Assembly: GCF_037042905.1 (NCBI RefSeq)
Contig: NC_087261.1
Coordinates: 18,414,001-18,478,000 of the forward strand
Reading direction: 5' to 3'
DNA length: 64,000 nt
From: Lytechinus pictus
Taxonomy: Eukaryota
Position 1 is the stretch's first letter; the number at the start of each line of letters is the position of its first letter. Both the position numbers and the translations under genes were made by a program. This document shows positions 1 to 30,796 of the stretch, piece after piece. Under the pieces are notes generated by a model. The model did no database searches. It saw nothing but the letters and a program-made list of their open reading frames with translations, and had not been told where the DNA came from.

Positions 1-10
1 TATATATCAG

Positions 11-250
11 CTTTGCAACGGAACAGACACTCTGCTGATATGCCCATCGCCAAAATTTCCTGACGATGTCGCCTCTACCGTGAGGAAAAGAGCACCTGAC
101 GTAATCACGTTTGTCGCAAATCTGACATTTGACTTCGATGGTTACATAATCAATGGCGGCTTGATAGAATACTACCCAGACCCAATTTATGAAAGCTTCG
201 GTGGACCAAACAGACTCTATGAAAGCAGTAACGGACGGCTCGAAATAACA
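11..250 (+). CDS. Plexin-like 1 exon, IPT/TIG domain
   Basis: cag|LCNGTDTLLICPSPKF...LTFDFDG...YYPDPIYESF...LEIT|gt; CPSP and YYPDP are typical plexin/Met IPT motifs. Confidence 0.88.
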
Positions 251-1272
251 GTAATTATATTCCCGTTTGCCTCACTCGTTCCGCTATCTTGTTTTATCTC
301 CTGGATAAGAATAAATGCATACAAAGAATAATTATCAAAAACCTTGTCCTTTTACCAGTTTTACATTTCAGTTTTCGATTTAAATGCATATGAGTACTTT
401 GTTAATTGTCATGAGTGAATGGTCTGTACCAGTGATACCTCAATAATTGAACCGAAAAACTAAAGAATAATTGAATTAAAAAGCATCTTTAACGTTCAGT
501 TTTAATTATTTATTCATTATATTTATCAAATTATTCATGCATTTATTTCTTATAACTTTTATTTGAAAAAAAAAATCATCTTTAATATGAAATGATGCTC
601 ATGACTGACAACTGAGCGAATAGTTCTCTCTCTGAAATTTCGAAACCCGTTTATTGTTTTGTACATCATCCTTTCCATGACATGCCTTGATAAGACCATG
701 GACTACTCTGAGTAGTAGGTCCATAATGAGATTAACTTCTTCTTCTTCTTATGTTGGTTTGAGTGGCGATTAGTCATATTTGACTATTGTCGCCATTGAC
801 TATATTAATACAAAATCTCACTTCTCACATAATGATATTATTACCAATATGATGTATACATATATGAAATATTTTTCTTGTGTATCCTTTTAATATGAAA
901 AAGGATAATTATGGTATGTACAAAAGTTTGCCGTAACTCTTGTCAAAATGGCATATAAACAAATCTTCACCAAAAACAAACCGCTATCTTCAGCTTAGTT
1001 CCAACTAGTTGCGCTTGCCCTGCCCTTTCAAAGATGCAATCATACCGGTCAGCACGGTACGTTGTGCCGATTTTTCGGCATTAAATGCCTAGGTCACCCA
1101 TGCATAGGCGAGGGGGCGCTAGTGTACCTGTGCTTATAGATGGGTTAAACATTAAAATAATTTGTTTCTTTTTTTTAAACAACAACAACAACAACAAGGC
1201 GAAAACACTTGTGGGCCTTGTTAGTTATATGTGCAGAACATATCATATTGTATATATTATATTATACATTAG

Positions 1273-1314
<42 letters not shown>

Positions 1315-4300
1315 TATTTCTTTTCACATTAGACTTGTACAAGCATATCCTTTCATATTTCTTATAGACAATACAATATAAAAATAGTACATCACTCCTT
1401 ACTAAAACGTTTCGTTCTTGAAACGAAACGTAAAAATGCTTTCTGTATCCCTGGGTCATCTTTTTTTAAATACTCCATTATTTGTCCTGGCTGTGATTCA
1501 TTCAATTCTACAAGGAGCATTGATCTTTCAATTATATATTTTGGACAATGTAAAAGATAATGTCTGACAGTTTCTACCTCAGGACATCTATCACAAAACC
1601 CTGTTGGATGGATCCCTAATCTTAGTAGATCTTGGTTAAGACCAGCGACTCCAAAACGGAGACGATGGAGCACAGTTTCCTGTCTCCCTAGATTACATTT
1701 ATATGTGGATAACACTGATGGTTGCAATTCTTTCAGTGCTGAGTTAGTTTTATTCCATCTTTCTTGCCAAACTATCTTACAACTTTTTGAAATAAGTTGC
1801 ATAATTTCTGATAATGTTATTTGATTATGAATTTCTATTTTGTTTGATAAAACTTTTTTTGCGCAGGAGTCTGCTATTTCATTTCCTTTTATTCCACAGT
1901 GTCCAGGGATCCACTCTAGGTATATATCTAAACCTTTATATTTGAGTCTTGTAGTAATAGTCAGAATTTATGTGATAATAGGATCGTCTTTCCGATTCTG
2001 TAAAGATAAAAGTGCACTTAATGAGTCACTGAAAAAAACAACACCTGTATATATATCTAAATATTCTATCCATTCCAGTGCAAGAATAATCGCAATTAAT
2101 TCCGCCCTATAGGAGGAGGTAAAACTAGATAACCTTTTGCCTTGGTAAAAAGAAAAATAAGGTACATAGAAAGCGGCTAACTTCTTCTTCTTCTTATGTT
2201 GGTTTGAGTGGCGATTAGTCATATTTGACTATTGTCGCCATTGACTCTATTATTACAAAATCTCACTTCTCACATAATGATATTATTACCAATATGATGT
2301 ATACATATATGAAATATTATTCTTGTGTATCCTTCTAATATGAAAAAGGATAATTATGGTATGTACAAAAGTTTGCCGTAACTCTTGTCAAAATGGCATA
2401 TAAACAAATCTTCACCAAAAACAAACCGCTATCTTCAGCTCAGTTCCAACTAGTTGCGCTTGCCCTGCCCTTTCAAAGATGCAATCATGCCGGTCAGCAC
2501 GGTACATTGTGCCGATCTGAATACAACTGAATGTATTTTTACAGCTACTAAAAAAAGGAATCAAAATTTTTATCATAATTGCATGAATATTTACGAATAT
2601 GCATTTTTTTCTCTTTATCCAGGGATTTAATTTAGATCTGGGAAGTAGAAAAGATGATATTCAGATTCTACTTGGACCAAGCAGTGTATGTGATGTGGAT
2701 TACCTTAAAACCGATGTTGTTGGATGCCAGCTACCCGAAGAGAGACCCCTCGCAGGTGATGAGAATGGAACACGCAGTGAAGGAACCACGAGGAACTTAC
2801 CAGCAGTGACGGTAATTCAAGTCTTAACATTTGTTTGTTTGGGGACAGTGCTCTACACAAAACGAGCACATGGTGGATCTTCATCCATTTGTGACCAGTC
2901 ACTCCCAAACCAACAATAATTCACCAAGGAGAGATTTCTGGGTAAATAACCAAAATACTAATTTTCCCTTTTTTAGCTACAAAAATATCTTTATCAGAAA
3001 GAATAATTGATCTTCCTTCAGACTGTCATCATTCTATATAAGTTGTAAAGTTGAATGAAAAAAAAAAGGTTTCATTTGACACCAGTCTTTGCAGACTGCT
3101 CGATTTTTTTTACTAAATTGCACAGTAAGCAAATCTCATGCTTGAGTGATTACAAACTTCAGACCTTGTTTTCTCTTATATTTTTTTCAACTCGTTATTG
3201 TGATGGTTATTCCTAATAAAGTTTGACAAGTTATGCACCATGTTCGAGCTTGGATCTACTACCTTTTCAAGATAAAAAACCATTTGTACATCACTTCAGG
3301 CGACTTCATGGTCTAGGGGTGGCTGATTACATGTATATGCATTTAGATTTCAATTTCTTTAGTCACAATGTGAACGAAACCATCCCGAATGTTATATTAA
3401 CATCTGAGTGTCTCGATTGTTATGTACAAGGGTGTGTACGGTGTATTACGCGCACGAGAAAGTGTAAAGGCTATAGGGGTAAAGGTGAAAATTAGAATGC
3501 GTGAGCTTACGCGCATCAGCAATAGGGTGTAGGTGTGAGTGTTTGTGTGTTGTTTGGGCTGGGTATACGTGTGAGTAATATGGTTTTGCGTGTGTTTGTG
3601 GCTGTGGGTGTTATGTGTGCTGATGTGTCGTTGCGTTTGTAGGTGTGTGCTAGTGGGCAAAACACCGTCAGAGTACTTACTCTGGATAGACAAAGTTTGG
3701 AAGCTTTGAATCGGTTTTATCGCACGAAACTTGTGGCTTACTTGGCATGGTCAAATATTTCAATTATGTTCTAAAGGTGTTACACGGAAACCTAAAGTTC
3801 TATCCGGGATTTGTTTCAGCGTGGCCTACGGAAGGAAACCCGTTGATAGCTACCGTAATACCCACTGTTATTGTATTGCTCATCTTCATCACCATACCTA
3901 CAATTATTCTAGCCTGTTGGTATAGGAAGAAACGGCTTGAAGTGAAACGTGCCAAGGAAGAAGTAGCCATGGTTCGAATGAACATCCTGAAAAGAGTTCG
4001 CGAAGGTATTTAGGGCGTTTTTACTTTCAGTCAATATGTTGCATTTTCCCGTTTGACTAGTCCACGGAGGGAACAATGTATTGCATATGAATTTAAAACA
4101 AAAATAAGTACCTGATGCATGGGATGTAAGAAAAATAGGGGAGGTAAATTCATTTTATTCTGATATTCATTGATATACATTATTATCTCTCTTGAAGTAT
4201 TTCGATCCATCAAGTTTATATAATACTTTACTTTTTGACCAATATAAAATTTATTTAGAACAACAATTCGAATGGAATACGCTTATTTCATTTATAGAAT

Positions 4301-7300
4301 AGGGCGTGTCTTACAGTTCAAATTGACAGCAATATAATGAGACTCGCTTGAAATATATGTTCACCTTCGATCGACTAATTCCTTTGTCTTATGATCAGTC
4401 TCTAGTACAAGTTTAGATATGACGGATGCTGATAACAGAGTTCAGTCTCAAGGAGTTCGTTTTGTGGGGAATGTCCAGTATGTGACACTGATGATGTTTG
4501 CCGGGCTAGGTGTTCACCCAGAAACATCAGATCCAGAGGTATCAATCTATTATTTTCTTTAAATTCTTATCTCTCTTTTTTGTTTTGTTTGTTTAAAGGG
4601 ATTCAAAGTAATAGTACAACAATAATAATATCATTAATAATAATAAAAATAATAATAACAATTATAAATCAAACAATTCATCCAATATAATACAGTGTAA
4701 ACCGTATTGCCCATTCATCGAATACAAGTACATGATCTTGCGGCATACTCCATAGCAAAAAAATATAATTTATGTGAAATATGTTTATTCAAATATGAAA
4801 TCACCGATGTAGGTCTCATTGCCAATGATAGGATTGTAATAGCTTCAGTGATCTGGATATCCAAATGCTCCTGACTTTAACTCATTATTATTCACTCATT
4901 CTTCCTCCAATCATTGGTCTAGTTTTTAAAACATTTTTTTCTTTCTTTCGTATGAAACCAACTGGTTTAAAATCCCTTTGAATCCTACAAAAATTGATAT
5001 ATTCAATATGCTCACTTTATGTTCCCAGTACATGGAAGACTTTATGGAGCATTCAGTTATCGTACTCTACCGAATGCTAAAAAAGAAGGAGAAAATGATA
5101 GAGTTCGTCAGGCAATTGGAAACGAAGAAAACGGGACAAGGTCGAGAAAGGTACGACGGAGTTTTTTTTTTTCTGAAAGTACGTTATGAAAATTAATAAC
5201 CATAAATAATGAATTGACAGCAGTATGATGTCCCGTTGAATTAAGAAGTTGTTTATCATGTTTATGTTTTTCAGTAATTTGTTATGAAAAAATAAGAAGA
5301 AAAAAAGAAGAGAAAACAAAAGCAACTCGGTAGTCAGACCCCATTCGTGAACTCCGTGATTATAACGTTTACTTTTAAATTAATAATAATAGTAATAATG
5401 TAGGTCTATAGCGCATTTCAGACCTGCAGGACTTTACATAAATAATATCATACAATATAAGACATTGCTTAAAATTACACTTAAACTGAACGTCAACATT
5501 AATCAAATACATATGGCACAAGTATAAGGAATTATCTAATTGAATGCTTCATTGAAGAGAAATGTTTTAAGTTGGGATTTGAAAAGTCCGAGATTATTTT
5601 GTGATCGGAGATTACTGGGTAGGGAATTCCAAAGGGCGCTATAGGAGAAAGACCTTTCACCTTGCGTCTTATTTCTTAGTCTAGGTACTTGAAGGAGCTG
5701 TAGGGTGGATGATCTTAGTGTCCTTGAGGGCGTGTATGGAGAAATGAGTTCAGAGATATTTCGAGGCAAGACCGTGGACAGCATTAAATGTTATTACAAG
5801 GACTTTGAAGCGAATTCGTGATTTAATGGGTAGCCAGTGAAGTTCTTTGAGTATTGGTATGATGTGGTTGTGTTTTTTTGATCTGGTGACACGTCTTGCG
5901 GTTGAATATTGAATTCTTTGGAGCTTTGCTATATCTTTGTCCGGGATTCTAGACAAGAGACTTTCACGGTTATCGAGAAGGGAAGACACGAAGGCATGAA
6001 TGAGGGTCTCAGTCACATTCTTACTAAGGTATGACCGAATAATTCCAATACGTCTCAGAGCAACTGAGACCTTGCGACAAAACCATGTTGACGTGTTGGC
6101 GCATGTTTATATTCTTGTAAAAAATGACACTAGATCACATACTGAAGGTAATGGCAGAACCTGGCCATTGACATCAAAGTCAGAGCCTCCTGAACTCGTC
6201 TGAAAGAAGATGAGACATAAAGCACCTCCATTTGGTGTCATTAAGTTTCAGATGATTGCTTACCATCCAGTTCCGTACTTCCTGGAGGCAGATTCCAAGA
6301 CTCCCTATACAACATTCTCCCTTCCTGAAGACTTTAAGGAGAGGCTAAGCCTTGTGTAGAGAAAGCAAGTGCTCGAATAATGTCCTGAACTGGCGTAGTT
6401 TAGCAAATAAAGAGAATCGGACCGATTACTGATCCTTGAGGCACGCCCCAGTCACCCCAGTTCTATACTTTAGTCTAGAAACCAGAATGTCTCGGATAAT
6501 TATTAAGGAAAGCATGCATGTTCTGTTTTCCGGAGTGTGCGTTTGTNNNNNNNNNNNNNNNNNNNNNNNNNNNNNNNNNNNNNNNNNNNNNNNNNNNNNN
6601 NNNNNNNNNNNNNNNNNNNNNNNNNNNNNNNNNNNNNNNNNNNNNNNNNNNNNNNNNNNNNNNNNNNNNNNNNNNNNNNNNNNNACGTTTTTCTGTCACT
6701 ACCTACACTGTAGTTTCCGGATGTGCAAATTTTTACTTGTATGAAAGATTATTTTAAAAAACTCAATAAAAAGTACTGCATGCTCAAGAAATGTTCACCA
6801 TTAATCGGGTACAATGCGCAACAATTACTAACATTAAGACCTACGTTTTTTTTTTACTTTCTTTTTGTAGGGAATTAATTGCATCCCTGTTAGCAATCAC
6901 GTTCGTCAGTGAATGGAATTCAATTGTCTTTACAGAGTAAGTTCATTTTTTCTCACATTTCTTTACATTTAAGCATGTACTATATAATTTTCTTCCGTGG
7001 TTGCACTGTTACAGACTACAGTGCCACAACATATTTTTCCCTCGTTCTATATCCCATGGTCATTTGAATCATCCTAGTTATAGATAAAGGAACAATTAGT
7101 GTTGTCAAAGTTTTACATAAATTTCGACTCGGGCTATGTACACTATTTAACAAGATGTGTCCCTCGTTAGATAAGTGGTGAGACAAATATTAAACAAAAA
7201 TACCACATAAAATTTAAATGTTACGGAAATACCAGAAAAAAAAATTAAGCAAGCTGCATTTGAAAAACGCCCCTAAAAGGTCATTTTGTAAAGAATTACA

Positions 7301-10300
7301 GAGTTATATAAAGTGTATTCTAAATCGAAAGTAATTAACAAATCAAAATAATTCATATACGTTTATAACCATTCCGTTGTGTCCACATCTATGTACAGTC
7401 ATTGATGAAGATCTGTAATCTCCAGAAACAAAAGGAAACTGACAAACCAAATTCAGCAATACAACCAAAATTTCAAATATTCTTGTGCAGCACATTTTAA
7501 AGAAAAGGAAATCTATAAAAATGGCACGCTTGCGTCGAAGAAGAAAACTGGAAGAATATGATCAATGAAATTTTGAGAAAAGTTGGACGAACAATAAGAA
7601 AGCTGAAAGTATTTGACTGTCCACTGCGAAGAAAATTTGATATGACCCCCAAATATTGTACAACACCCCTTTTTTCCTACCCATTCGACACTGAAATCCA
7701 ACAAAACATCTCTTTTGAGGTCTCATAGGACAAATATCTTATCTATGATATAATCATGACAATATTTGAAAACCTGTATTATATGTGCTGATATTGAAAG
7801 AGCACCTGACATTGCGATGGACTAGATGAACGAGAAAAAATAAGTTAAATACATACAGTACTGGGGAAGTTGTACAGATGTGACAACACACAGCTTGGTT
7901 GCATTGCCAGTGTGATGATCTAGAAGCGCGATAGCTCAGTCGGTAGAGCGGGGGATTCGTATTCCGGTGACCCGGGTTCGATTCCCACTTGGTGCGCAAG
8001 TGCCCTTTGGTAAGGCATTAATCCTCATTACCAGGTCCTTCGGAGAGGACCTTAAGCCGTCGGTCATCTGGTTGTTTGCTTACAAGCATTCATGCTTTCT
8101 TAGCAATCAGGTAGAAAATCCCCACCAATCACCAATCTAGAAGCGTGGGCTAGGGCTCTTGGCATAATTAACTTAATGTCTATTGATTCTTATCTTCATG
8201 TTTCATTTATCCCCTTTATTCAATTTTCAGAGTGATGACCGCTCTTGTTGAAGATGAAATCATGGGGGCATCTGAATCCAGAAGGCCTCTGGACAAACTA
8301 TTCACAAAGTAATAAATCAATCCTTGGGTTGGGTTGGGGTTATCATTGTCATGCATGAACGTAATGTACAGTGATTATTAATTTACGTTTAGAGAAAACA
8401 ATAAATCGAACGTCATTATGTCAGAATCATAAAGTCTTATATTAAGCTTTAGGAAGAGACGTCAACTTCGGATACTAAACCAATTCCATTAGTAAAGTCT
8501 AGCATATCGTTGTTATGCAATTATCTTGGACATACATCTAAACTCTGCATCATTACGATTGTATATCCTCTCATTTAAGAACTGAATCGGTCACCGAGAA
8601 ACTGATCAGCAATTGGTTTTCAATCTGCATGTTCGAGTACCTAAAGGTGAGGCCTGTTATTCCCAACTCAAAAAGAAAAAAAATATATATAAAGGTATAT
8701 ACCCAACTTCTTCAGTATCAAATTGTAGTATTAACTTTCAGTTTAACTGAAAATCATAGTTAATGGAGAAAACCAGATTTTTGTAGTTACCAATTTAGCA
8801 TACAACTTGTATATGCTCCTGCACCCAAAATGCACTAGTTTTAGTATTAAATGATCATGGATTAGATTTTTTTTTCCATTTAGGTAAACATGCTCTACGT
8901 ACATAGGTCACTTTCGAAATTTGATCGTGGTATATTGAATGTAGCATTGCGTAATGTTTGGGTTTTTTTTTTTTCCTTTAAGAGAACTTAAAACCAAAAA
9001 TACCTATGAAAAATATGTGTCATGGCTATAAAATAGAATTAATCAATAGCGTAGAACGTAATTAGAAGGTAGTGTATATTGTACACCATTACATTTTTAA
9101 TGTTGAACTCACTCGCGCACAGTTCTTTCTATTTACTTTCTCGTTTCATGTACTGCTTCAGGTATATGGACTCTATTCATTATTCATGCTGTACCAAGCA
9201 ATAAAGACCCAAGCTGAGAAAGGTCCTATAGATGCTGTGACAGGGGTTGCGTACTACACGCTGGAGGCTGATAAACTCATAGATGAAGAGATCGACTTTC
9301 ATTCTCTTGTACGTTCACGGAAATTATGATACTTGAGATTATACTGGTAGCAAAATTCCCGATAGAACAAAAACAATTTTAGTCATATAATATACTTCGG
9401 ACCGTATTTGTATATCATGAGGGGTGTCCTTTTATACTATGGACTTTTTTTAAATGGAGGTCCTCGTCTGAAAAAAAAAAAAATCTTTGATCTCATTGTA
9501 GGTTTAAAAAGTCTCTACGTACATGTAATTAACAATAAAAGCATAAACTCTATGAGCGAACAGTCATATCGTATGTGTTTTTTGGGGTGTGTTTCTTTCT
9601 AGAAAGTCAACAAGAGAAGTACTTTACTGATACCTCAGGTTATACATTTGCAATGAAAATACAGAACTCTAAAAACATATCTTATACTTTCGTTTACATT
9701 GCTATTGATGTAGAACATCGATGTTGTTGATGAAGACGGCCATACCTATGTTCGAGTAAACGTTTTGAATGTTGATACCGTGAAGCAAGCCAAACAGAAG
9801 ATCCTAGATTGCCTTTGGATGAAGGGTTTCTGCCTGCTACCGAGGGATGTTGATGCAGTTGACCTTGGTGAGAATAATAATAATACAGGGCAATCAGAAT
9901 AGGTGTTGAATTTAAGCTGACATAAATTATTTAAAGACGTCTTCTGATACTAACGTAAATTCTGACGCTTATGTAAATTATTTCATGATGCCGAAAATGA
10001 ATATGTATGTACCATTTACAGAAGAGAAGAAAACCCACAATGGTAAAGCACGATAGCTTGAAAGATCAACAAAGTATGTGGTGGAGCCTAGCGTTAGAAG
10101 ACTGAATTGATCAATTCGGAAAAAAGGCGCAATAAACGGACTACCAGAACAAAGGACAGGCGTAGATTAAGCAATAGAGTACCAAGGTGCGACGTCAGTT
10201 GCCATGGTGTCATGACAGGCTGGTTCTAAACAGAGTCGCAGCTGACGATCGTCTGTACATGACTTTGGCTCGTCTGAAAAAAAAAATGCTAGTAGTGATT

Positions 10301-13300
10301 AAATTCCTATAGCAGCCATTTTCTCTTATGGGAAACACACGCTTTCAATCGGCGGGTTCATATGTTTAGACCCAGGCCGCCATGACACCATGGTAACTGA
10401 CGTCATCGCTTCGGTACTCTATTCTGTGTTTAATGAGGAAGGTGTTGATTCTCATGACACAAATTTCGTGGTACCTGTAGGGCCGTAATATTAATCAAAT
10501 TAACTTGAATAGGGATGTTAGGCATTTCGTGTAGGCGTTCTGACTGCCAGTATTTAAATGAAACAGCAGTATAATAAATTCAACTGAAATGCCCGATACA
10601 CAACAACATGGATCATCATTCTGCCGATAAGATCAATACTTCACGTTTCATATTTAGTTATCCAAAGTGAATTTTCGCTCGTATACATTTTTTTAAAGTT
10701 TGGATCGAATCTCCTGAAAGCTATACTTTGCTTCAGGATGTTGACGACATGTCTGAGACACAGAGCAAGGTCATGTTCAATACAATGAAGAGCTACGGGG
10801 TTCGTAATGGTTTCTTCTACCTTATTTTGCGATAACTATTATAAATCCGGATGTTTTATTTACTCACATCATAAGAAAGATGCTCACTCATTTAAGCAAT
10901 TACAAACCTGTAATCATTGTAAGACGGCAGTAAAGTAAGTATGGAGTAAGAATGAGTAAGTAAACTTCAATAATGAGGCATTCTGACGGAATAATTGGAT
11001 TATCCATATCTACCGACGCACGGGTGTTAAAATCACCCACACACAAAAGCGTTCTGTACATGTAAATATATTGACATGGTGCATGGTTGTCAATTTGAAA
11101 TGATTTACTTGAGTTTGATAAGGATCCGCTAATTAATTTCCAAAGCAAATAGGGGCAACAGTTTGTTGATTTGTTTTTGAAGCCAGATCTCCTCACGACG
11201 TGTACTCGTTTGCCAACATGTACCATTTTGTTAATCCTAAAGTTACTGGTCTTGTTTTTTTTTTTACTTTACCCATTACTGTTTTTTGCTGTATCCCTGC
11301 AATATAACTTTAGCGTTCCGAGGAAGATGCGTAATATTGCTTTCAGTTTGTATGCATTGGATTGATATCTTTAGGGAGTACCGATCTACTGAGAGAGAGA
11401 GAGGTTGAATATTGGTACATCGATTTTCAACTGTATTTCATTTATTAGATTAGGAACGGATCTCGTGTTGCACTGGTAGGTAAGAACCAGCTACCGAAAG
11501 CACCTGTCAATGGCTACCAAGCTCTTGATGTCAAAGAATTATCTTCGAACACATGTAAGTAAATACATCTGAATATTTTAAAATGTACCCATCATGACTT
11601 GTGCTAAAAAAAAGGAAATGCCTTCCTTAATCACCTGTGAATCTTCCCAGAGTGAAAAAAACAGACCTTTAAATTTCTAGTCTCGAATGATTTCCATATC
11701 AATATATAGAGAAAATCGTCAAACGTGACATATTACAGCACTCATTGTCGGTAAATGATGAACTCGGTATGAATACTCTCAAGTACAGAGAATTCGACTT
11801 TTTTTAGCCTTGGCTTGTATGTTATCGTCATCTGTTGAAAAAAACCTTTGAATTCATATAAATTTTAATAAATGTTTCCTTCCCCTCCCTCAGATGAATC
11901 CTTGATACCTGTATCAGATGAGACGAATCTTACATCAGGACCATCTCAACTGACTTTGAATGCTGTCCATTTAAAGGTTTTTAGCTAGAATTGTGACATT
12001 TGTATGGTTTTGCGTTGTTTTATCGTGTAGTTGAGAAAATTCGTCTTTTTTTTAATAATAATATTCCGCATTTATATAGCGCTTAACACATCGGAACGAC
12101 GTCTCTAAGCGCTTTACATATATATTATAACCCCGGTCATCGGATCCTTGCATGCCCGCATACAATGTATGTACCTTCTCCACTCCCTGGGGAGCATTCC
12201 AACAAGAGTTCCAAGACTCAATTGCTAGACATACTACATAGGCTTTCGCATTATACCGGGTACCCATTTAACACCTGGGTGGAGAGTGGAAAATTGTGGA
12301 TTGACCCCTTGCCAAAGGACGCTAGGCCATGGTGGGATTCGAACACGCGACCCTCTGATTACAAGGCGAGAGTCAGAACCGCTACACCACAGCGCTTCCA
12401 CACCTCGTACTTATATCAAGAATTATACCATGTTTAATCGCTGGAGCCAAATCCACGTTTGGCATGGGAGGGTGGGCAAAAGTAAATCAGAAATGTCAAA
12501 AATTACAACATTTTACGGATGAAGCTTGCCACAAACATGAAAAGTTTGATAGAAGGAATAGTTTTTTCCAAGTTTAGTTGCCTTATCATGCTTTCCAATA
12601 ATTTCAAGGCTATAATGTATTATGCATTGCTTATTATGATTTTCAAGTTGTAAAAAATATTGGGGAAGGGCAAATCGACATTCCCCGCCCCGGCACAGGA
12701 TCAACTCTGCTTTACTCTTTCTTGACCATATGTATAATTATGAAAATGTAGGCTGTGGTCAATTGAATGCGTAAAGTATGTTTTCGATTAACTGTTTAAA
12801 TCGCCCAGATTGATGCTGAATGGCCAACAAGGAAAGCAGTCAACCTGCCTGATAACATCAAAAGAAAGAGAGCAGAGCTTGATCGGAATCTTGCTATCCC
12901 ACACATGCTTAAAATGAAAGTAAGTTATTGTATCTCCGATGTAATGGTAGTGGAGTCAGCATCGCTTGCTGGAAAGAACACGGTTTATGCCAGAGTGTAT
13001 TCACAGTGTGGAACACAATGTGAAATCACCTTCACACTGCTAAACTTGAATACTGCAACAGCGGGAATCACATACGCACATATAGTCGACCAAGTGAACA
13101 CGCTACACTGTAAAAACTGTGGTATTAAAAATGACACCAATTGGTGTTAATAGAGGAACACACACTGAGGTGTTAAAATTACACCCTAGAGATTAAACAT
13201 AACACCAAAGAGTGTAAATGTATCAACAAAATGTGTTGTAATAACACCTATAGGTGTAAAACGAACACCACCAATTTAACACCGGTGTAAAATAACTGGT

Positions 13301-16289
13301 GTGGTCCTCTATGTACACCGGTTGACACCACAGTTTTTGCTATGTATGAACAGTCATACTGTCAAAGTGTTCACAGTTTGAAAATACATGTATATTCACA
13401 CTGTTGAATCTGGGTGTTTTAAACAGTGGGAATAATAATTCACATCGTCCACTTTGTGACCTTACTGTGATATGCACGACACTGTGTTCTTTCCAGCATG
13501 ACTGTGAGGACACGCAGGGGGATAATCATGATAATGATATGATTGACCGTTGCAATTATATACTTAATTTTTCAATTTTCCATTTCGAAGAAGCGACTGT
13601 TCAGTATGTCGAGATTATGTGTGATAATTACATTTTTTTTTTATACTAGTATTCCCACAGTCTTTGGTGACATTAACTTTTGACGTGAGTACCGATCCAA
13701 AGAAGCCGTTATGACTCGGACCTAATTATTACCATCATTTATCATCAATATATTTATGACCATAAGGCCCTACTATGGTTGTATTTGTTAGCGTCGGAGC
13801 ATTACTCGCATAATCATGATCATCACAATCGCTACCACCACCAACACCTTCATCATTATCACTATAACTATGATAGTTACTCTCTTATCATCATAAAATC
13901 GCATCATTAAATTTGGATGTTGTAATGTCTGTTCAATATCGTTGATTTGTAGGCATCAATAGGTCCATACGTAGATGGAGTCTTTGAGGTTATGTTCAAG
14001 AAACCATCCCGGATCCCTTTACCTGTAAAGCATCTCTTTGACACGTTTGATGACCTTGCCGTCAAATACACCGATGGGAAATCGTCCAAGGAATGCGCGC
14101 AAAATTGGAAGATGAATTGGTGAGCCAAGTTCGATATAGTATTATTATTTTTGTATTACGTTAGATATAATTTTGAAATAAAGCACAACATCAAAATGCA
14201 TCAGTATCAGGGATTTCAGACACACTTATCACACCACCCTATGCTTGAAGTTAAGTGTTTTAAATCTAACCACGAAATTGTGGTTTAAACGCACTTGTAA
14301 TGCAGGCCCATCCGTAATTAAAATGACTCATTGTGCACTAGAGTTGGACTTGATGAGGTTAAATGGCATTTGTTTTGTCTTGTTTGGTCCATCAAGTCCA
14401 AGTCTTTTGTTGGTTGTCCATCCAGGATTTGCGTCATTAACAATTATTTGTATTCATTTACATCCTTTACATCAGATTTTTAAGAGTTTTTTTTTCTCCT
14501 CCTGATCGTTTTTCCATCGTTGGAGCAAAATATAAAAGTAAACCTCAACGCGAAAACTCTGTCAAAAGATAACATAATGTACCTTTTGTTATACGGAGGT
14601 AGCTCTTTCCTGGAAGTGCCAGAATATAATATGTTTTGTTTTATATCTTGTCGTTTGCCCTAATTCACTCTCTTACGTAGCTTGTCTCGCTTCTGGTGTC
14701 AAATACTTACCAACCTACCATCTTTGTTTGACATGCCAAGATCAGAAACGGCTGATCGATGTGTCATCGCTGTTGCTGAAGCCATTACAGATGCAGCTAG
14801 AACCACCACGCTGTCACAGGTAAATATACCCATCACACTATTAATCTTCCAGAAAGTATGTTTGATACCAAGTTGTCTATTCGTTTCGTTTTCTCCTTTA
14901 TTCAATCGATCTACAGAAAAAAAAATCAATATCTTCACCCTCAGTTAATTCCCAGTGTTCTGCATAATTGTCATGTAAAAATAAGCAAATCTTTATGTTG
15001 TTTCATCTATTTTTACTCGCCACCCGCTTTTGACGAAACGTTCAGCGTTGTACTTGTGTTACCTCTGTGTACTATCAAAATTCAACTTGCTCTTGCGTTG
15101 GGATTTCTCCTTGATGAATATTCAGGTGGGGCTATCAAAGATGTGATCACTGGAACGATCGAATAAACACCTCAAATGTGAGCAAAGGGGACCTCATGGA
15201 TAAACAGTGGTATTGTATTAATACCGCTGAAATGGGCCACCCTCCATATGATATGTACGTTATGTCAAATTGAGCATGTATATATTTTATTTTTTATATG
15301 GAAATAAATACAAACAAACAAATACAAACAATTGGAAAATGTCTGCACTCAAACCAATTTATTATACGTTCATTATTTTTTTATGTATGGTCGGCTATTA
15401 TCATTAGAGTGAATCATACCATCTACCCTACTACAAAGAACATCCACTACAGCGACAGATGATGTCTGACTACTGCTCCCTGATATCAAGCCAAGCAAAG
15501 GTCAAGTCAAGACTCAAGTTAACAAGAGCCTGTTCCTCAATCACAAAGGTAAGTTAATTAAAGAATACTTCCCTTTTTATTATTTGTTCTCCGATTGTTT
15601 TAACATGCCAGCCAGAAGGGGAGGAGGTGTGGGTGGGGTCTCAGCAAAAAAATTTCACACAGTCACGTGCTAGTCAGGTTTTTAGACAACTGTTCAAAAT
15701 TACAGTCTAGATTCAAATAATTTTGTCCGTTCCTCCATCCGTCCTTTTTATATGACCTCTTTATTGACAACACAGTGCATCTCAGGTAAAACATTTCTAT
15801 ACATTGGGCCCTTATCTCAGAGCAATTGCTTGGTCAGCCCTTGCTTATACCGCACATGCATGAGTGACATTTCCAACCTTATTTATTATAAATGAATAAT
15901 TCAACATAAGGTAAACATTGTTCAGGTAAAAGTTGTTAAGGTTGCCGAAAATGGTAAGAGAATTCAACAATTTCAATGGATCATTCGGTACATTACCCTT
16001 TTGATAAAGTTTATCCAAAAAAAACCGATCGATTTATTCCTAGTTCTTTAAGAAGGATGAATATTGAAGAAGTAGGATTGAATGAATCGTTACTGGCATT
16101 ACATGTGTGGATTAAGATTCCTGTCGTGTCTGGAGTTAGCCCTTGATTTAACACAATGTTCCTATTTCATTTTTTTCTTTCATTTAATCATGTTCCCTTT
16201 AGGAGTTCAAAGGTCATTTTAGTCACCTTTCGAATTTGCTGCACCTTTACAACCTAACCAAGGATGACGTAGAGGGCCTCTTGAAATAA
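11..16289 (+). CDS. Plexin-like gene 1, 3' part (IPT-IPT-TM-GAP/RBD); 18 exons, 5' end outside the window
   Basis: Exons 11-250, 2623-2811, 3777-4005, 4399-4538, 5029-5150, 6871-6936, 8231-8308, 8580-8646, 9162-9308, 9714-9867, 10699-10799, 11449-11554, 11894-11976, 12809-12919, 13953-14119, 14681-14819, 15408-15548, 16203-16289. All introns are GT-AG, phases match and there are no internal stops. Plexin motifs are collinear: [54 protein letters not shown]. Confidence 0.93.
733..2516 (-). mobile_element. 5'-truncated I/Nimb-type non-LTR retrotransposon (RNase H, C-terminal CCHC) with a duplicated 339-bp 3' end
   Basis: Minus-strand SSYRAELIAI, FSDSLSAL, WIPGHCGIKGNEIAD and C..C...ETVRHYLLHC; frameshifted; (GAA)n tail; direct repeats 733-1071 and 2178-2516. 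Confidence 0.85.
1277..1316. repeat. (AT)n microsatellite in the LINE 3' UTR
   Basis: Direct reading. Confidence 0.95.
2623..2811 (+). CDS. Plexin-like 1 exon, last IPT domain
   Basis: GFNLDLGSRKDDIQILLGPSSVCDVDYLKTDVVGCQLPEE...LPAVT; phase 0/0. Confidence 0.88.
3777..4005 (+). CDS. Plexin-like 1 exon, transmembrane helix and juxtamembrane segment
   Basis: VLHGNLKFYPG...LIATVIPTVIVLLIFITIPTIILACW-YRKKR: hydrophobic run followed by a basic stop-transfer sequence. Confidence 0.9.
4399..4538 (+). CDS. Plexin-like 1 exon, start of GAP C1
   Basis: LDMTDADNRVQSQGVRFVGNVQYVTLMMFAGLGVHP aligns with plexin DMTDL...GIPFLDY..Y...LFPG..HP. Confidence 0.85.
5029..5150 (+). CDS. Plexin-like 1 exon, GAP C1
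   Basis: YMEDFMEHSVIVLYRMLKKKEKMIEFVRQLETKKTGQGRER resembles plexin F..FIRTLE.Q..FS.RDR. Confidence 0.83.
5378..6420 (-). mobile_element. Degenerate L2/CR1-group LINE, RT C-terminus and 3' tail
   Basis: ETLIHAFVSS.LD...LQRIQ..ARR.T...HI.PILKELHWLPI; frameshifts; TAA-rich tail. Confidence 0.85.
6547..6684. other. Assembly gap (N run)
   Basis: Run of n characters. Confidence 0.99.
6871..6936 (+). CDS. Plexin-like 1 exon, GAP C1
   Basis: RELIASLLAITFVSEWNSIVFTE resembles RGNVASLIM; polypyrimidine tract + ag, gtaagt donor. Confidence 0.83.
7925..8134 (+). mobile_element. tRNA-derived SINE
   Basis: A box TAGCTCAGTCGG, B box GGTTCGATTCCC, non-tRNA body, direct repeat ATCTAGAAGCG at 7918 and 8135. 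Confidence 0.85.
8231..8308 (+). CDS. Plexin-like 1 exon ending at the arginine-finger position
   Basis: VMTALVEDEIMGASESRRPLDKLFT(K); phase 2/2. Confidence 0.8.
8580..8646 (+). CDS. Plexin-like 1 exon, GAP C1
   Basis: [23 protein letters not shown] resembles RTESVAEKMLTNW. Confidence 0.9.
9162..9308 (+). CDS. Plexin-like 1 exon, GAP-RBD linker
   Basis: [34 protein letters not shown], a plexin hallmark. Confidence 0.93.
9714..9867 (+). CDS. Plexin-like 1 exon, Rho-GTPase binding domain
   Basis: [26 protein letters not shown]...DAVDL resembles VKVLNCDTITQVKEKILD. Confidence 0.9.
10173..10423. mobile_element. MITE with ~55-bp imperfect TIRs
   Basis: aatagagtacc...gacgtcagttgccatggtgtcatg mirrored by catgacaccatggtaactgacgtc...ggtactctatt. 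Confidence 0.75.
10699..10799 (+). CDS. Plexin-like 1 exon, RBD
   Basis: VWIESPESYTLLQDVDD...FNTMKSYG resembles EW....LQDED...LNTLAHY. Confidence 0.85.
11449..11554 (+). CDS. Plexin-like 1 exon, RBD end and variable loop
   Basis: IRNGSRVALVGKNQLPKAPVNGYQALDVKELSSNT; donor gtaagt at 11555, with an in-phase alternative donor after 11479. Confidence 0.8.
11894..11976 (+). CDS. Plexin-like 1 exon, variable loop
   Basis: (Y)ESLIPVSDETNLTSGPSQLTLNAVHLK; VHLK corresponds to plexin WHLVK. Confidence 0.75.
12052..12402 (-). mobile_element. tRNA-headed SINE with Deu-domain-like core and L2-like tail
   Basis: Minus strand: TGGTGTAGCGG ... GTTCGAATCCC head, CCACCCAGGTGTTAAATGGGTACC core, AAGCGCTATATAAAT tail ending in (TAT)n. 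Confidence 0.8.
12809..12919 (+). CDS. Plexin-like 1 exon
   Basis: IDAEWPTRKAVNLPDNIKRKRAELDRNLAIPHMLKMK resembles EIYLTRLL.MK; cag/gtaagt. Confidence 0.78.
12967..13498. mobile_element. MITE containing a nested MITE (~13104-13346)
   Basis: Outer TIR tgctggaaagaacac / gtgttctttccagca; inner tacactgtaaaaactgtgg / ccacagtttttgctatgta with ACACC subrepeats. Confidence 0.7.
13953..14119 (+). CDS. Plexin-like 1 exon, GAP C2
   Basis: YVDGVFEVMF...IPLPVKHLFDTFDDLA...NWKMNC resembles FVDDLF...LPLAIKYMFDFLD.QA...WKSNC. Confidence 0.9.
14681..14819 (+). CDS. Plexin-like 1 exon, GAP C2
   Basis: LSRFWCQILTNLPSLFDMPRSETADRCVIAVAEAITDA resembles LPLRFWVN..KNPQFVFD....DACL.VVAQ.FMD. Confidence 0.9.
15408..15548 (+). 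CDS. Plexin-like 1 exon
   Basis: SESYHLPYYKEHPLQRQMMSDYCSLISSQAKV resembles LLYAKDIP.YK..V..YY.DI. Confidence 0.78.
16203..16289 (+). CDS. Plexin-like 1 terminal coding exon
   Basis: EFKGHFSHLSNLLHLYNLTKDDVEGLLK* resembles F...AL.ELY.Y..KY..EI. Confidence 0.75.
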   Translation, partial: EFKGHFSHLSNLLHLYNLTKDDVEGLLK

Positions 16290-24592: not shown

Positions 24593-24735
24593 TTAAAGCC
24601 AACAAATTTTTCACAAATTGGAAATGAAATGTGGTTGCGTTAATTTTGATACACACTGTACAACATGATATAGCCAGAGGGCGTGACTTTGACAGCCCCC
24701 TGAGAGGGGTAGGCGTCAATGTGCCAGCCCTTTTT

Positions 24736-26135
24736 ATGGATAATGTTATGGATAATATTGTTGGTTTGGATAATAGGTATTACACCCCAAACGATTTTTC
24801 GAACTTAATGAATAATTACAATACTAAAGATACTTTAACAATGCTTCATTTTAACTGTCGAAGCTTGAGACGTAATTTTAGCAGGTTCTCAGAATGTATT
24901 AATTGCTTTAAGAATTATATTACAGTATTTGGTATATCTGAAACATGGCTTAGAGATAATGAAGAACAATATTATAATATACCAGACTTTTCTTTTATTA
25001 CTAGTAACCGTGATAACAAGCGTGGAGGTGAAGTTGGAATGTATGTAAATAAAAATCTTAAATTTAAAAAGAAACCGGATTTAGACATTTTCCAAAATTG
25101 TATAGAGAGTTTATTTATTGAAATCCACATAAGATCAATATGTTTCATAGTTTCAGTCATCTATAGACCGCCTAGCCAATCATTAAAAGATTTTTTAGAA
25201 ACAGTTCAAATACCTTTAAGCAAAATCTCAAGTGAGAAAAAACAATGTATTATCATGGGGGATTTTAATGTTAATTTGATGGACCTAGATTTAATGTCAT
25301 GTAATCATGATTTTGTTAATATTTTTTCTACCTTTTCATATTTTCCATTAATTAATAAACCCACAAGGATAACAAGTAATTTGGCAACAATATCAGATAA
25401 TGTATTTTATAACCAACCTGAAAGTGTCGTAGAAGCTGGTATCATTACAACATATGTCAGTGATCACCTAACCCCTTTCGTCATAATTGAAGGTCCTTTA
25501 ATCTCTAATAATTCAAAGACCCATTACCCTATAAGAGACTTCTGTGAAAAAAATATGATTACATTTTGTAGAAAATTACAGTGTGTTGATTGGACATGTT
25601 TAAACAATACATAAAACGTTGATGAAGTTTATGATATATTTTTAGACATTTACAAAAAACTATATAATGAAAGTTTTCCAATAACAAATGTTAAAATAAA
25701 AAAGACATCTACAGAAATGTCATGGTTTAATACGGATATCAAGAAAATGTGCAAACGAAAATACTTTTTATATAAGAAATTTTTAAAGAACCCAACTTCC
25801 CATAGAGAGAATGTATATAAAAGTTACAGAAACATGGTCCATAGCTTCATTCGTAAAAAGAAGCGTGAATTCTATCATCATAAATTTGAAAATGTAAAAC
25901 ACAATTCTAGAGCGACATGGAAAATAATAAATAACATTTTAACAAAAAATAAGAATAGAGATGTTGATTACAGTATTGAAAATAATGGAGAAGTGACCGA
26001 TAATCAGCAAGAAATTGTAAGTGTATTTAATGATTTTTTTTTTTGGAGTATTGGTTCTAAAATACATGAGAGTACTAGAAATCTATCTCAAGAAAATAAC
26101 TTTAAAAGGTTTATGAAACACAGTATTTGTCATTC
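24736..26135 (+). mobile_element. CR1/L2-group LINE ORF2 fragment (APE endonuclease and linker)
   Basis: HFNCRSL, GISETWL, RGGEVG.YV, IYRPP, IIMGDFN, KPTRIT, SDH; in-frame stop at 25612; truncated before RT. Confidence 0.92.
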
Positions 26136-26544
26136 TACAGTGCCGGCCGCAGGAAACGTCACGCCCGAGCACGCAAACACCCTAGGGGGCTTTTGCGTCT
26201 AACCGAGGGTATTCAAGGGGAGCCCCCTAGGGTGTTTAGCCGCGCCCGCAGTTTCCTGCGTGCTATATAATATTGTCTAAGAAAGCTTAAACAACAAGAT
26301 AGAGTGTGACAAAGTATTAAACGCTTTTGATCAATCCATCGAAATAAGAATTGCATGTTTATTTTCATTAATATAATTTAAGATTAAACCAATTAGTTCA
26401 ATTAATGCAAACTAATTAAAACAGTCTTTCATAAAACCATATTAATATATACAGGCATAATATTTGCTAACTTCATTTTATCAAGAAAATAAATAAATTA
26501 CATATGCAAGTCAGTGGTTGAGTAATGCAATACACAGCAGGTTG

Positions 26545-29764: not shown

Positions 29765-30796
29765 ATGACTAACAGCGTATTGGGAGTACTTCTAATCCAG
29801 ATGATGATATCATGTCAGATCGGATCAATCCAATCAGCTCCTCTCTCCTCCTACTTGGTTTCTTCATTTACCTCTCCTGATACTGACTCCAAACTACCAT
29901 TCAACCACATCGCCATCAACAACATCACAGGAGATATTTACATAGGGGCACGAGAGAGGCTTTACCAACTCGACTCCGAGCTCACCCTCAAAGAAACTGT
30001 TGATACTGGAAGCTGTCCTTTACTCAATAATAACAGATTCGTTAATGATAACAAACTCATTGTTCCTGTGGTAATACCTCAGAACTATAAGCTTATCACT
30101 TGTGGAGGGTGTAAAAATGATTGTCAGGTGAGGAACTTGGCTAATATATCACTAGACCTTTTCAATTTAGGCAATACTGACGAGGTTGCGGCGAAAGGAG
30201 ACCAACCTTCTGTTGGTGTCGTTGCTCTTGATGCTGACTTTGATAGTCGGGGAGTTGGTAAAGCTGATGGATTGTTTTACCTATTCATTGCGAGAAGTGG
30301 TGGTGGTCCTGGTTCCGGATTCACATTCATTTCAAAGAACAGTCTCGTAGACATTAAATCACAACAAAATATACCAGCGAATATCCTTACTGACGATTCA
30401 ACAAGGTCCAAACATATTATTTCGTACAAAAATTTTATATACGTTTTTATATCAAGACACGAGAAAACTTATTTAGGACGTCTTTGTCGTAATTCACTAG
30501 ACGAAGACTTCGAATCGTACACTGAGATAGAGCTACAATGTACACGTGGTGGATCTCAGAATATTATTCAATCGGCTTACATTGGACCAGCAGGATCCCA
30601 GTTAGCTGAATCAATGAATATCAACACCACGGATGACTTATTGTACGCGGTATTCTCATCTTCACCTTCGTCTTCTCTTTGTGTGTATAAGATGATCGAT
30701 GTCCAGCAGAGCTTCGAAGATGCCATCTTAGGATGCATTCTAGGAACTGAAACTGGCATCGCAAATAGCTTCATGTCTGGAAGTAAATGTGAAGAG
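29765..30796 (+). CDS. Plexin-like 2 first coding exon: signal peptide and Sema domain
   Basis: Hydrophobic N-terminus; FNHIAIN..TGDIYIGARERLYQL; YLGRLC...FESYTEIELQC; DDLLYAVFS; SSLCVY; acceptor ending at 29717; donor gtaagt. Confidence 0.93.

What the first reader, a model, noticed from the sequence alone, without database searches (positions are those of the whole stretch)
8290..8610. Plexin GAP arginine finger lost: LLRRTES reads LFTKTES
Seen: the spliced sequence is PLDKLFT-K-TESVTEK (aca 8304-8306; aa|a across the intron). The second arginine motif survives only as a shortened NCL-SRFW (canonical NCLPLRFW). Known: the RR of PKLLLRRTES supplies the catalytic arginine for plexin Rap/Ras-GAP activity. 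All 18 exons remain open with intact splice sites, so this does not look like pseudogene decay. Inference: a GAP-dead pseudoenzyme plexin acting as a decoy, scaffold or alternatively wired receptor.
Basis: partly seen in the sequence, partly recalled or inferred. Interest (0 to 1): 0.75.

Follow-up and report, generated by a model that had tools for sequence, protein, structure and literature searches.

The report
Sea urchin plexin without GAP arginine
This sea urchin gene belongs to an old, conserved and transcribed family of plexin receptors whose intracellular enzyme site has lost its catalytic arginine and most substrate contacts, so the family must signal some other way, although this particular copy carries a frameshift further upstream.

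Summary
Exon 8231-8308 joins exon 8580-8646 (GT..AG) and reads ...SESRRPLDKLFT-K-TESVTEK. Solved plexins have LRRTES there, with no gap in the alignment. A spliced RNA contig shows the junction. The second arginine motif reads NCL-SRFW.

The GAP-dead reading is well supported and goes beyond the finger. Seven of ten experimentally validated catalytic or Rap-contact residues are changed.

It is not a single-gene oddity.
- Nine near-identical "A-type" copies alternate with eight "B-type" plexin genes in a 1.4-Mb array.
- S. purpuratus (LFTNTES) and Diadema (LFGK/LFGR) orthologues also lack the arginine, and together they form a 100%-supported clade.
- dN/dS is 0.18 against S. purpuratus and 0.11-0.33 among the paralogues, so the family is under selection.
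- The clade also carries a conserved YxxL-x9-YxxL motif, a candidate alternative output.

Caveat: this copy has a 38-bp frameshifting deletion in its first Sema exon, 47 kb upstream of the window. It may be a young pseudogene of a functional family.

Decoy, scaffold or rewired function remains inferred. The scan had already noted a similar arginine-less plexin elsewhere in this genome (s1-317528). I found no published description of natural pseudo-GAP plexins.

The parts
2..250 (+). Exon (last-but-one IPT region of the ectodomain). It is the first exon of the gene that lies inside the window; the gene starts about 48 kb upstream.
   Evidence: tblastn of S. purpuratus XP_030839429.1 (P0003). 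Frame and donor GT.
2623..2811 (+). Exon, membrane-proximal ectodomain
   Evidence: AG..GT
3777..4005 (+). Exon with the transmembrane helix and the juxtamembrane segment (..PLIATVIPTVIVLLIFITIPTIILACWYRKKRLEVKRAKEE..)
4399..4538 (+). Cytoplasmic exon (juxtamembrane)
5029..5150 (+). Cytoplasmic exon, start of the GAP-homology N-terminal segment
6871..6936 (+). Cytoplasmic exon (RELIASLLAITFVSEWNSIVFT). An RNA contig joins its end to 8231.
   Evidence: loose end at 8231, table 7
8231..8308 (+). Finger exon, 78 nt: ..VMTALVEDEIMGASESRRPLDKLFT + aa. ACA at 8304-8306 (Thr) stands where the catalytic arginine finger stands in active plexins.
   Evidence: The canonical plexins of the same genome end this exon in ..MRR, with the intron at the same spot.
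8580..8646 (+). Exon: a completes AAA (Lys, in place of the second Arg), then TESVTEKLISNWFSICMFEYLK
   Evidence: PDB plexins, E 2e-4; PF08337 27.4 bits; RNA joint 8308>8580
9162..9308 (+). Exon, most conserved GAP-N piece (..AEKGPIDAVTG..)
   Evidence: (PF08337 34.3 bits); RNA joints
9714..9867 (+). Exon, first half of the Rho-GTPase-binding (ubiquitin-like) domain
   Evidence: PF20170 31.9 bits; RNA joints 9308>9714 and 9867>10699
10699..10799 (+). Exon, second half of the RBD
11449..11554 (+). Exon carrying the first YxxL (YQAL) of the paired-tyrosine motif
11894..11976 (+). Exon carrying the second YxxL (YESL); together YQAL-x9-YESL
12809..12919 (+). Exon, linker into the GAP C-terminal segment
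13953..14119 (+). Exon, GAP-C segment, ending ..AQNWKMN + tg
   Evidence: PF08337 25.6 bits; RNA joint 12919>13953
14681..14819 (+). Exon with the second-arginine (FLR-type) motif C-LSRFWCQILTNL and helix 15 (AVAEAITD). Arg kept; Asn1005 equivalent is Gln; Gln1032 equivalent is Glu.
15408..15548 (+). Exon with the degenerate activation segment (SESYHLPYYKEHP in place of KDSPSNKLLYAKDIP)
16203..16289 (+). Last exon, with the stop codon at 16287-16289

Best explanation
The stretch is a real, spliced exon junction in the cytoplasmic RasGAP-fold domain of a sea urchin plexin. The gene belongs to an echinoid-specific plexin clade that I call A-type. In this clade the catalytic arginine finger has been replaced: Thr in this genome and in S. 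purpuratus, Gly in Diadema. Most residues that hold Rap's switch I and II in active plexins have changed as well.

The domain keeps the plexin fold and its Rho-GTPase-binding insert, and it is kept by purifying selection. The family therefore most likely works as a non-catalytic (pseudo-GAP) receptor, much as IQGAP proteins use a RasGAP fold with Thr in place of the finger as a scaffold.

The most concrete candidate for its output is a clade-specific paired-tyrosine motif (YxxL-x9-YxxL/I) in the linker after the RBD. It may act together with the neighbouring B-type plexins, which keep the finger.

Shown: the sequence state, the splicing, the clade membership and the selection. Inferred: the loss of GAP activity and the alternative output.

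The copy in this window carries a 38-bp frameshifting deletion in its first Sema exon upstream. It may itself be a recently disabled member.
For: Junction and reading; RNA joint.

Alignment to solved plexin A1, A3 and B1 over the whole domain (E 1e-66 to 1e-55), with T/N opposite RR.

Site table using the residues validated in PMC3787391. The window has R711T, R712K, N1005Q, Q1032E, P1050E, N1052Y and K1053H, and keeps R1001, N1009 and D1036.

The canonical plexins of the same genome keep RR with the same intron position, and so does the B-type neighbour.

All A-type copies share LFTKTES, NCLSRFW and AVAEAI.

The clade with Diadema and S. purpuratus members has 100/100 support, and none of its members has the finger Arg.

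Selection: dN/dS is 0.18 against S. purpuratus (GAP segments 0.16 and 0.21), with identical intron positions, and 0.11-0.33 among seven other intact copies.

Fold: PF08337 and PF20170 match, and Foldseek of the orthologue's model hits only plexin intracellular domains.

The YxxL-x9-YxxL motif is present in every clade member and absent outside the clade.

IQGAP precedent, Thr in place of the arginine finger: PMC12871552.
Against: No activity was measured, so loss of GAP function is inferred from mutational data on other plexins.

RNA evidence is family-level. The copies are up to 100% identical in exons, so transcripts cannot be assigned to this copy. The three raw RNA runs cover the exons only 0-2.5x, with no read on 8308>8580.

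This copy has a 38-bp frameshifting deletion in its Sema exon. One other copy has a +1 insertion in exon 15, and another has its Sema exon split by about 9 kb. The array therefore shows birth-and-death turnover.

dS against S. purpuratus is about 1, close to saturation.

The structure model is only moderately confident (pLDDT 60.7) and its coordinates could not be inspected. A substitute arginine (for example ESRR, nine residues upstream) is argued against only by its lack of conservation in Diadema.
Confidence: 0.72

Rival explanations
1. The gene in this window is itself a young pseudogene. The arginine loss is inherited from a functional pseudo-GAP family, but this copy no longer makes a receptor because of the frameshift in its first Sema exon. 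Its clean 3' exons reflect recency or gene conversion from its neighbours.
For: There is a 38-bp deletion at C17:18,366,583, and the frame stops three codons later. Seven other copies have one open frame of 351-450 codons across that point. Mosaic blocks of 100% identity between copies suggest gene conversion. Other copies also show lesions.
Against: All 18 exons in the window, and the ectodomain exons found upstream, are open with intact splice sites. This rival concerns only this copy and does not touch the family-level reading.
Confidence: 0.45
2. The domain is still an active GAP, using a non-canonical catalytic residue (another Arg or Lys supplied in cis, or in trans by a B-type partner) or acting on a different GTPase than Rap.
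For: The FLR-type Arg (SRFW), Asn1009 and Asp1036 equivalents are kept in this genome. Plexin catalysis on Rap is already non-canonical (PMC3787391). B-type plexins have been linked to Ran (title and abstract of PMC10645588). The neighbouring B-type genes keep RR.
Against: Seven validated residues are changed, including Q1032E and the N1052/K1053 positions, whose single mutations largely abolish activity, and N1005. The kept Arg is Asn or Gln in the orthologues. ESRR is not conserved in Diadema. IQGAPs, with the same Arg-to-Thr change, are inactive.
Confidence: 0.08
3. Artefact: a wrong splice choice, a missed alternative exon or an assembly error creates the apparent loss of arginine.
For: Old S. 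purpuratus gene models skip the 78-nt finger exon in frame (P0160, P0164, P0152), so the exon might be optional.
Against: The joint is seen in RNA. The same codons occur in nine copies, in an NCBI Lytechinus pictus model (P0168) and in S. purpuratus. No second finger-like exon lies between 4 and 17 kb. Skipping the exon would remove the finger region altogether, not restore it.
Confidence: 0.02

Closest known systems
Canonical plexins (vertebrate A-D, Drosophila PlexA/B, and the two canonical urchin plexins on contig C3 at 57.2 and 9.98 Mb)
   Same: Same architecture: Sema, PSI and IPT ectodomain, a single TM helix, and a split RasGAP-fold cytoplasmic domain with an inserted RBD. The intron sits at the same position after the finger codons. 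The orthologue aligns over its full length to solved plexin A1, A3 and B1 domains.
   Different: The finger Arg is Thr and its neighbour Arg is Lys. The Asn1005, Gln1032, Pro1050, Asn1052 and Lys1053 equivalents are changed. There is a one-residue deletion in the FLR-type motif and a three-residue deletion in the activation segment. An added YxxL-x9-YxxL motif is present.
Echinoderm plexin expansion (Junqueira Alves et al. 2019, PMC6374515; starfish Plexin-B1 to B8; S. purpuratus expansion cited there)
   Same: The gene belongs to this known lineage-specific expansion. Tandem duplication of plexin-type genes is noted there too.
   Different: That paper calls the Ras-GAP domain the best conserved part of plexins and does not mention arginine at all (0 occurrences). 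The loss of catalytic residues in an echinoid clade, and the alternating A/B array, are not described there.
IQGAP GAP-related domain
   Same: A RasGAP fold in which a conserved Thr replaces the arginine finger and the FLR motif is altered. It is non-catalytic and used as a scaffold (PMC12871552).
   Different: Unrelated lineage within the RasGAP superfamily. It is cytosolic, not a receptor. The plexin FLR-type Arg is kept in this genome.
Engineered GAP-dead plexin mutants (Arg to Ala in either arginine motif)
   Same: The same positions are affected. These mutants abolish Rap GAP activity and cell-collapse signalling (cited in PMC3787391).
   Different: Those are laboratory mutants of otherwise intact sites. 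Here the change is natural, ancient and accompanied by many further substitutions.
Arginine-less plexin noted elsewhere in this genome by this scan (s1-317528)
   Same: The same phenomenon in the same genome: a plexin lacking the GAP arginines that is transcribed and conserved.
   Different: It lies on another contig and, by that note, lacks all three arginines. I did not check whether it is the C3:13 Mb relative that I saw with ..DALF|..TET.

Membership tests
Plexin family (receptor with plexin cytoplasmic domain) | Plexin cytoplasmic RasGAP domain (Pfam PF08337) | tested here: met
   Exon-level hits above the 25-bit cut-off (27.4, 34.3 and 25.6 bits). Genome scan. The orthologue P0003 carries PF08337 and aligns to Plexin-A1 3ryt at E 1.4e-66.
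Plexin family (receptor with plexin cytoplasmic domain) | Rho-GTPase-binding ubiquitin-like insert (PF20170) splitting the GAP fold | tested here: met
   31.9 bits on exon 9714-9867. The RBD structures match the model with TM 0.8.
Plexin family (receptor with plexin cytoplasmic domain) | Sema, PSI and IPT ectodomain and a single TM helix | tested here: inconclusive
   The TM helix and IPT exons lie in the window. Sema and further ectodomain exons lie upstream, but the Sema exon of this copy has a 38-bp frameshift. The other copies are open there.
Catalytically active plexin RapGAP | Arginine finger (zebrafish PlexinC1 Arg711 = p120GAP Arg789) | tested here: not met
   Thr (ACA 8304-8306). The neighbouring Arg is Lys.
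Catalytically active plexin RapGAP | Second conserved arginine (Arg1001, FLR-type motif) | tested here: met
   Arg in NCLSRFW in all eight intact copies examined (this one and seven others). It is Asn in S. purpuratus and Gln in Diadema, so it is not conserved in the clade.
Catalytically active plexin RapGAP | Switch II clamp, Asn1005 and Asn1009 | tested here: not met
   The Asn1005 equivalent is Gln; Asn1009 is kept (roles from PMC3787391).
Catalytically active plexin RapGAP | Switch I contacts Gln1032, Pro1050, Asn1052 and Lys1053 | tested here: not met
   Glu, Glu, Tyr and His respectively. The activation segment is three residues shorter (roles).
Catalytically active plexin RapGAP | Measured stimulation of Rap GTP hydrolysis | not testable with these tools
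   Needs a biochemical assay.
Pseudoenzyme (maintained non-catalytic homologue) | Purifying selection on the dead domain | tested here: met
   dN/dS is 0.16-0.21 on the GAP segments against S. purpuratus and 0.11-0.33 among paralogues. The clade is shared with Diadema.
Pseudoenzyme (maintained non-catalytic homologue) | Expressed as a correctly spliced mRNA | tested here: met
   Eight GT..AG joints in contigs of run X1, and single stranded reads on five joints in raw RNA runs. This is family-level evidence, not copy-specific.
Pseudoenzyme (maintained non-catalytic homologue) | This copy has a complete open reading frame | tested here: not met
   A 38-bp deletion in the first Sema exon upstream of the window. 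It was not verified in reads.

The most novel reading that the evidence does not exclude
Sea urchins run a two-gene plexin module, A next to B, repeated about eight times here and adjacent in S. purpuratus too. The partners have degenerated in complementary ways. A has lost the arginine finger, keeps the FLR-type Arg, and has gained an ITAM-like paired-tyrosine motif. B keeps the RR finger but has His at the FLR-type Arg. On this reading the pair works as a heteromeric receptor that has switched plexin signalling from Rap inactivation to tyrosine-based, immune-receptor-like signalling, in a fast-turning-over multigene array.
Probability: 0.1. Interest if true: 0.8.

Novelty: new variant of a known kind. 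Interest (0 to 1): 0.5.

Why it matters
All well-studied plexins are thought to signal through their Rap-GAP site, and GAP-independent signalling is known mainly from engineered mutants. A plexin clade that has lived without the arginine finger since before the Diadema-camarodont split, and is still under selection and amplified in tandem, is a natural experiment. It asks what a plexin cytoplasmic domain does apart from catalysis. It also gives a concrete, testable candidate output, the conserved paired YxxL motif.

The finding also refines the known echinoderm plexin expansion. Only the two canonical urchin plexins examined here keep every catalytic or Rap-contact position that I could read in them. 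Every expanded paralogue examined has lost at least one.

Tried and rejected
1. Alternative finger exon or alternative splice sites that restore Arg. tblastn with A-type, B-type and canonical finger peptides over 4-17 kb found only exon 8231-8308. A weak basic stretch at 7470-7544 (E 0.05) has no RNA support, because exon 6 joins directly to 8231.

2. RNA editing. No differing letters are listed at 8304-8308 or 8580. A-to-I editing of ACA cannot give Arg in any case. Coverage is thin.

3. Pseudogene decay of the family. Rejected by the dN/dS values and by the open frames in eight of the nine copies across exons 6-17.

4. A substitute Arg from ESRR. It is not conserved in Diadema.

5. Species. 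Earlier notes say Lytechinus pictus. The closest named protein is an L. pictus model (P0168), but it matches this assembly at only 77-95% per exon. I therefore say a camarodont sea urchin, probably Lytechinus.

6. The search for homologous proteins returned only 11 relatives because of its word and length filters. No L. variegatus or other urchin orthologues were obtained.

7. Rfam on the highly expressed intronic repeat found nothing.

9. The window's own spliced protein could not be handed to the fold or search tools because it has no reference. The S. purpuratus orthologue was used instead.

10. Complex prediction with Rap was not attempted. No Rap sequence was admissible, and a negative result would not be evidence.
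Full report
**What is in the sequence.** The + strand of the window from base 2 to 16289 holds the last 18 exons of a plexin gene. All 18 have AG/GT borders and give one open frame of 791 codons ending in a stop at 16287-16289. Exon 8231-8308 ends ...GAC AAA CTA TTC ACA AA|gt. Exon 8580-8646 begins ag|A ACT GAA TCG.

A spliced contig of the public run X1 carries the joint 8308>8580 (depth 160, GT..AG), and other spliced contigs of the same run carry seven further joints of the gene. A loose end at 8231 matches the end of exon 6, and one at 14119 continues into exon 16. Three stranded raw RNA runs cover the exons only 0-2.5-fold and add single reads on five joints, all in the orientation expected for a + strand RNA.

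**Is the arginine really missing?** The S. purpuratus orthologue (XP_030839429.1 = P0003, 69% identical to the window's protein) aligns over its whole cytoplasmic region to solved Plexin-A1, -A3 and -B1 domains (E 1e-66 to 1e-55). There is no gap around the motif: LLLRRTES against DTLFTNTES. The window reads DKLFTKTES at the same columns.

Wang et al. 2013 (PMC3787391) define the first Arg (zebrafish PlexinC1 Arg711 = p120GAP Arg789) as the catalytic finger. They define Arg1001 as the second conserved arginine, and they show that Asn1005, Asn1009, Gln1032, Asn1052 and Lys1053 are needed for activity.

At these ten positions the window has T, K, R, Q, N, E, D, E, Y, H where a vertebrate plexin-A has R, R, R, N, N, Q, D, P, N, K. 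Seven of the ten are changed, including a natural Q1032E, the very substitution that largely abolished activity in that paper. The second motif is NCL-SRFW, one residue short, with its Arg kept. Loss of GAP activity is thus strongly indicated, but it is inferred and not measured.

**Context in the genome.** A Pfam scan of the whole assembly (812 Mb) finds two canonical plexins on contig C3. These end the homologous exon in ..LLMRR and ..VFMRR, with the intron at the same spot. It also finds several divergent paralogues and a 1.4-Mb tandem array on C17 (17.12-18.52 Mb).

Pairing Sema first exons with cytoplasmic exons gives 17 genes in the array. Nine are A-type (this gene is the last) and they alternate with eight B-type genes.

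- All A-type copies read LFTKTES, NCLSRFW, AVAEAI and YQAL-x9-YESL.
- Their exons are 91-100% identical to the window's, in mosaic blocks that suggest gene conversion.
- B-type genes keep the finger (KSLFRR|NETIVEK, AG|G at the same intron) but have His at the FLR-type arginine (SLPLHYW).
- Other paralogues read LFK., LFKR or QQFR. at the finger.

Degeneration of the GAP site is therefore widespread in the urchin expansion, and the A-type is one of its most degenerate forms.

**Is it decay?** Across exons 6-17 (453 codons), eight of the nine A-type copies are open with every splice site intact. One copy has a +1 insertion in exon 15. Pairwise dN/dS among the intact copies is 0.11-0.33, with dS up to 0.11.

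I rebuilt the S. purpuratus gene exactly from its genomic locus. Its intron positions are identical and its exon lengths nearly so. Window against S. purpuratus gives dN/dS of 0.18 overall, 0.16 and 0.21 for the two GAP-homology segments, 0.20 for the RBD and 0.30 for the linker. dS is about 1.

In a maximum-likelihood tree of cytoplasmic domains, the window groups with S. purpuratus and Diadema proteins in a clade with 100/100 support. No member of that clade has the finger Arg (T-K, T-N, G-K, G-R). Other urchin clades and the vertebrate plexin sit outside it. The arginine-less state is therefore old and maintained, so the family is not a decaying pseudogene.

The gene begins about 48 kb upstream of the window. 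Its first coding exon (signal peptide and most of the Sema domain) has a 38-bp deletion at C17:18,366,583 relative to its closest paralogue. The frame shifts and stops three codons later (..ENYFKHKR*). Seven other copies have a single open frame of 351-450 codons across that point.

The remaining upstream exons that the search listed look normal. I could not check the deletion in reads, and I could not fetch more of the genome. This particular copy may therefore be a recently disabled member of a functional family. The RNA evidence cannot be assigned to it, because several copies are identical over the exons covered.

**How it probably works.** The domain keeps the plexin fold. PF08337 and PF20170 match. 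An AlphaFold model of the orthologue (pLDDT 60.7, moderate) hits only plexin intracellular domains, and its RBD matches solved RBDs at TM 0.8.

The closest mechanistic precedent is the IQGAP GAP-related domain, a RasGAP fold with a conserved Thr in place of the finger and an altered FLR motif. It is inactive and serves as a scaffold (PMC12871552).

In the A-type clade the loss coincides with a paired-tyrosine motif, YxxL-x9-YxxL/I, in the linker after the RBD. The motif is present in Lytechinus-type, S. purpuratus and Diadema members and absent from the other clades aligned.

My best reading (about 0.7) is a non-catalytic plexin receptor family. Its output may run through that motif or the RBD, possibly with a B-type partner. 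That last step is inference (perhaps 0.3-0.4) and needs experiments.

**Comparison with what is known.** The echinoderm plexin expansion is published (PMC6374515, which cites the S. purpuratus adhesome survey). That paper treats the Ras-GAP domain as the best conserved part of plexins and never mentions arginine. Full-text searches for pseudo-GAP plexins found nothing.

Within this scan, a similar arginine-less plexin on another contig of the same genome was already reported (s1-317528). The phenomenon is therefore not new to the scan. What this analysis adds is the A/B array, the clade-wide dating, the selection figures and the upstream frameshift.

**Verdict.** This is a new variant of a known kind, of moderate interest.

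Noticed in passing
G000:C17:18,366,583 (about 47.4 kb upstream of window base 1); locus L062 position 884: A 38-bp deletion in the first Sema exon of the very gene whose 3' half is in the window. It shifts the frame and gives a stop three codons later. Seven other array copies are open there.
   Followed up: partly
window 29849-30802 (+), and further exons from about 54.6 kb to 61.2 kb: The next gene (B-type plexin) starts with a large Sema exon at about 29.85 kb, not at 54.6 kb. Its cytoplasmic exons lie beyond the window. They keep the RR finger (KSLFRR|NETIVEK) but have His in place of the FLR-type Arg (SLPLHYW).
   Followed up: partly
G000:C17:17.12-18.52 Mb: An array of 17 plexin genes, nine A-type alternating with eight B-type. 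Exon blocks of 100% identity between non-adjacent copies suggest gene conversion. One A copy has a +1 insertion in exon 15, and another has its Sema exon split by about 9 kb.
   Followed up: partly
protein P0152 (S. purpuratus, 1719 aa), residues 1-190: An old gene model fuses the 3' end of a B-type plexin (..SLPLHYWMTTLTHP..) to an A-type gene. This implies the same B-then-A adjacency in S. purpuratus.
   Followed up: no
proteins P0160, P0164, P0152 against window 8231-8308: Some S. purpuratus models skip the 78-nt finger exon in frame (..SIHFT-N/D-TES..). This may be alternative splicing or a model artefact. In run X1, exon 6 joins exon 7.
   Followed up: no
window 11950-12550 (intron between exons 13 and 14): A repeat with very high RNA depth (up to about 1800x) in three RNA runs, with many molecules starting at 12066 and many fixed differences from the window. 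So it is transcribed from other copies elsewhere. It has no Rfam match.
   Followed up: partly
window 24628-26199 (+), 1395-1967 (-), 52130-52795 (-): Long open frames typical of retrotransposon proteins (endonuclease/reverse-transcriptase-like and RNase H-like) lie between or inside the plexin genes.
   Followed up: no
window 6547-6684: A run of 138 N inside the intron between exons 5 and 6. No exon is expected there by homology.
   Followed up: no
protein P0168 (NCBI 'plexin-A1-like [Lytechinus pictus]'): The closest named protein shares DKLFTKTES but matches this assembly at only 77-95% per exon. It lacks exon 6 and ends in the intron after exon 9. It is either a copy absent from this assembly or a model from another individual or species.
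   Followed up: partly
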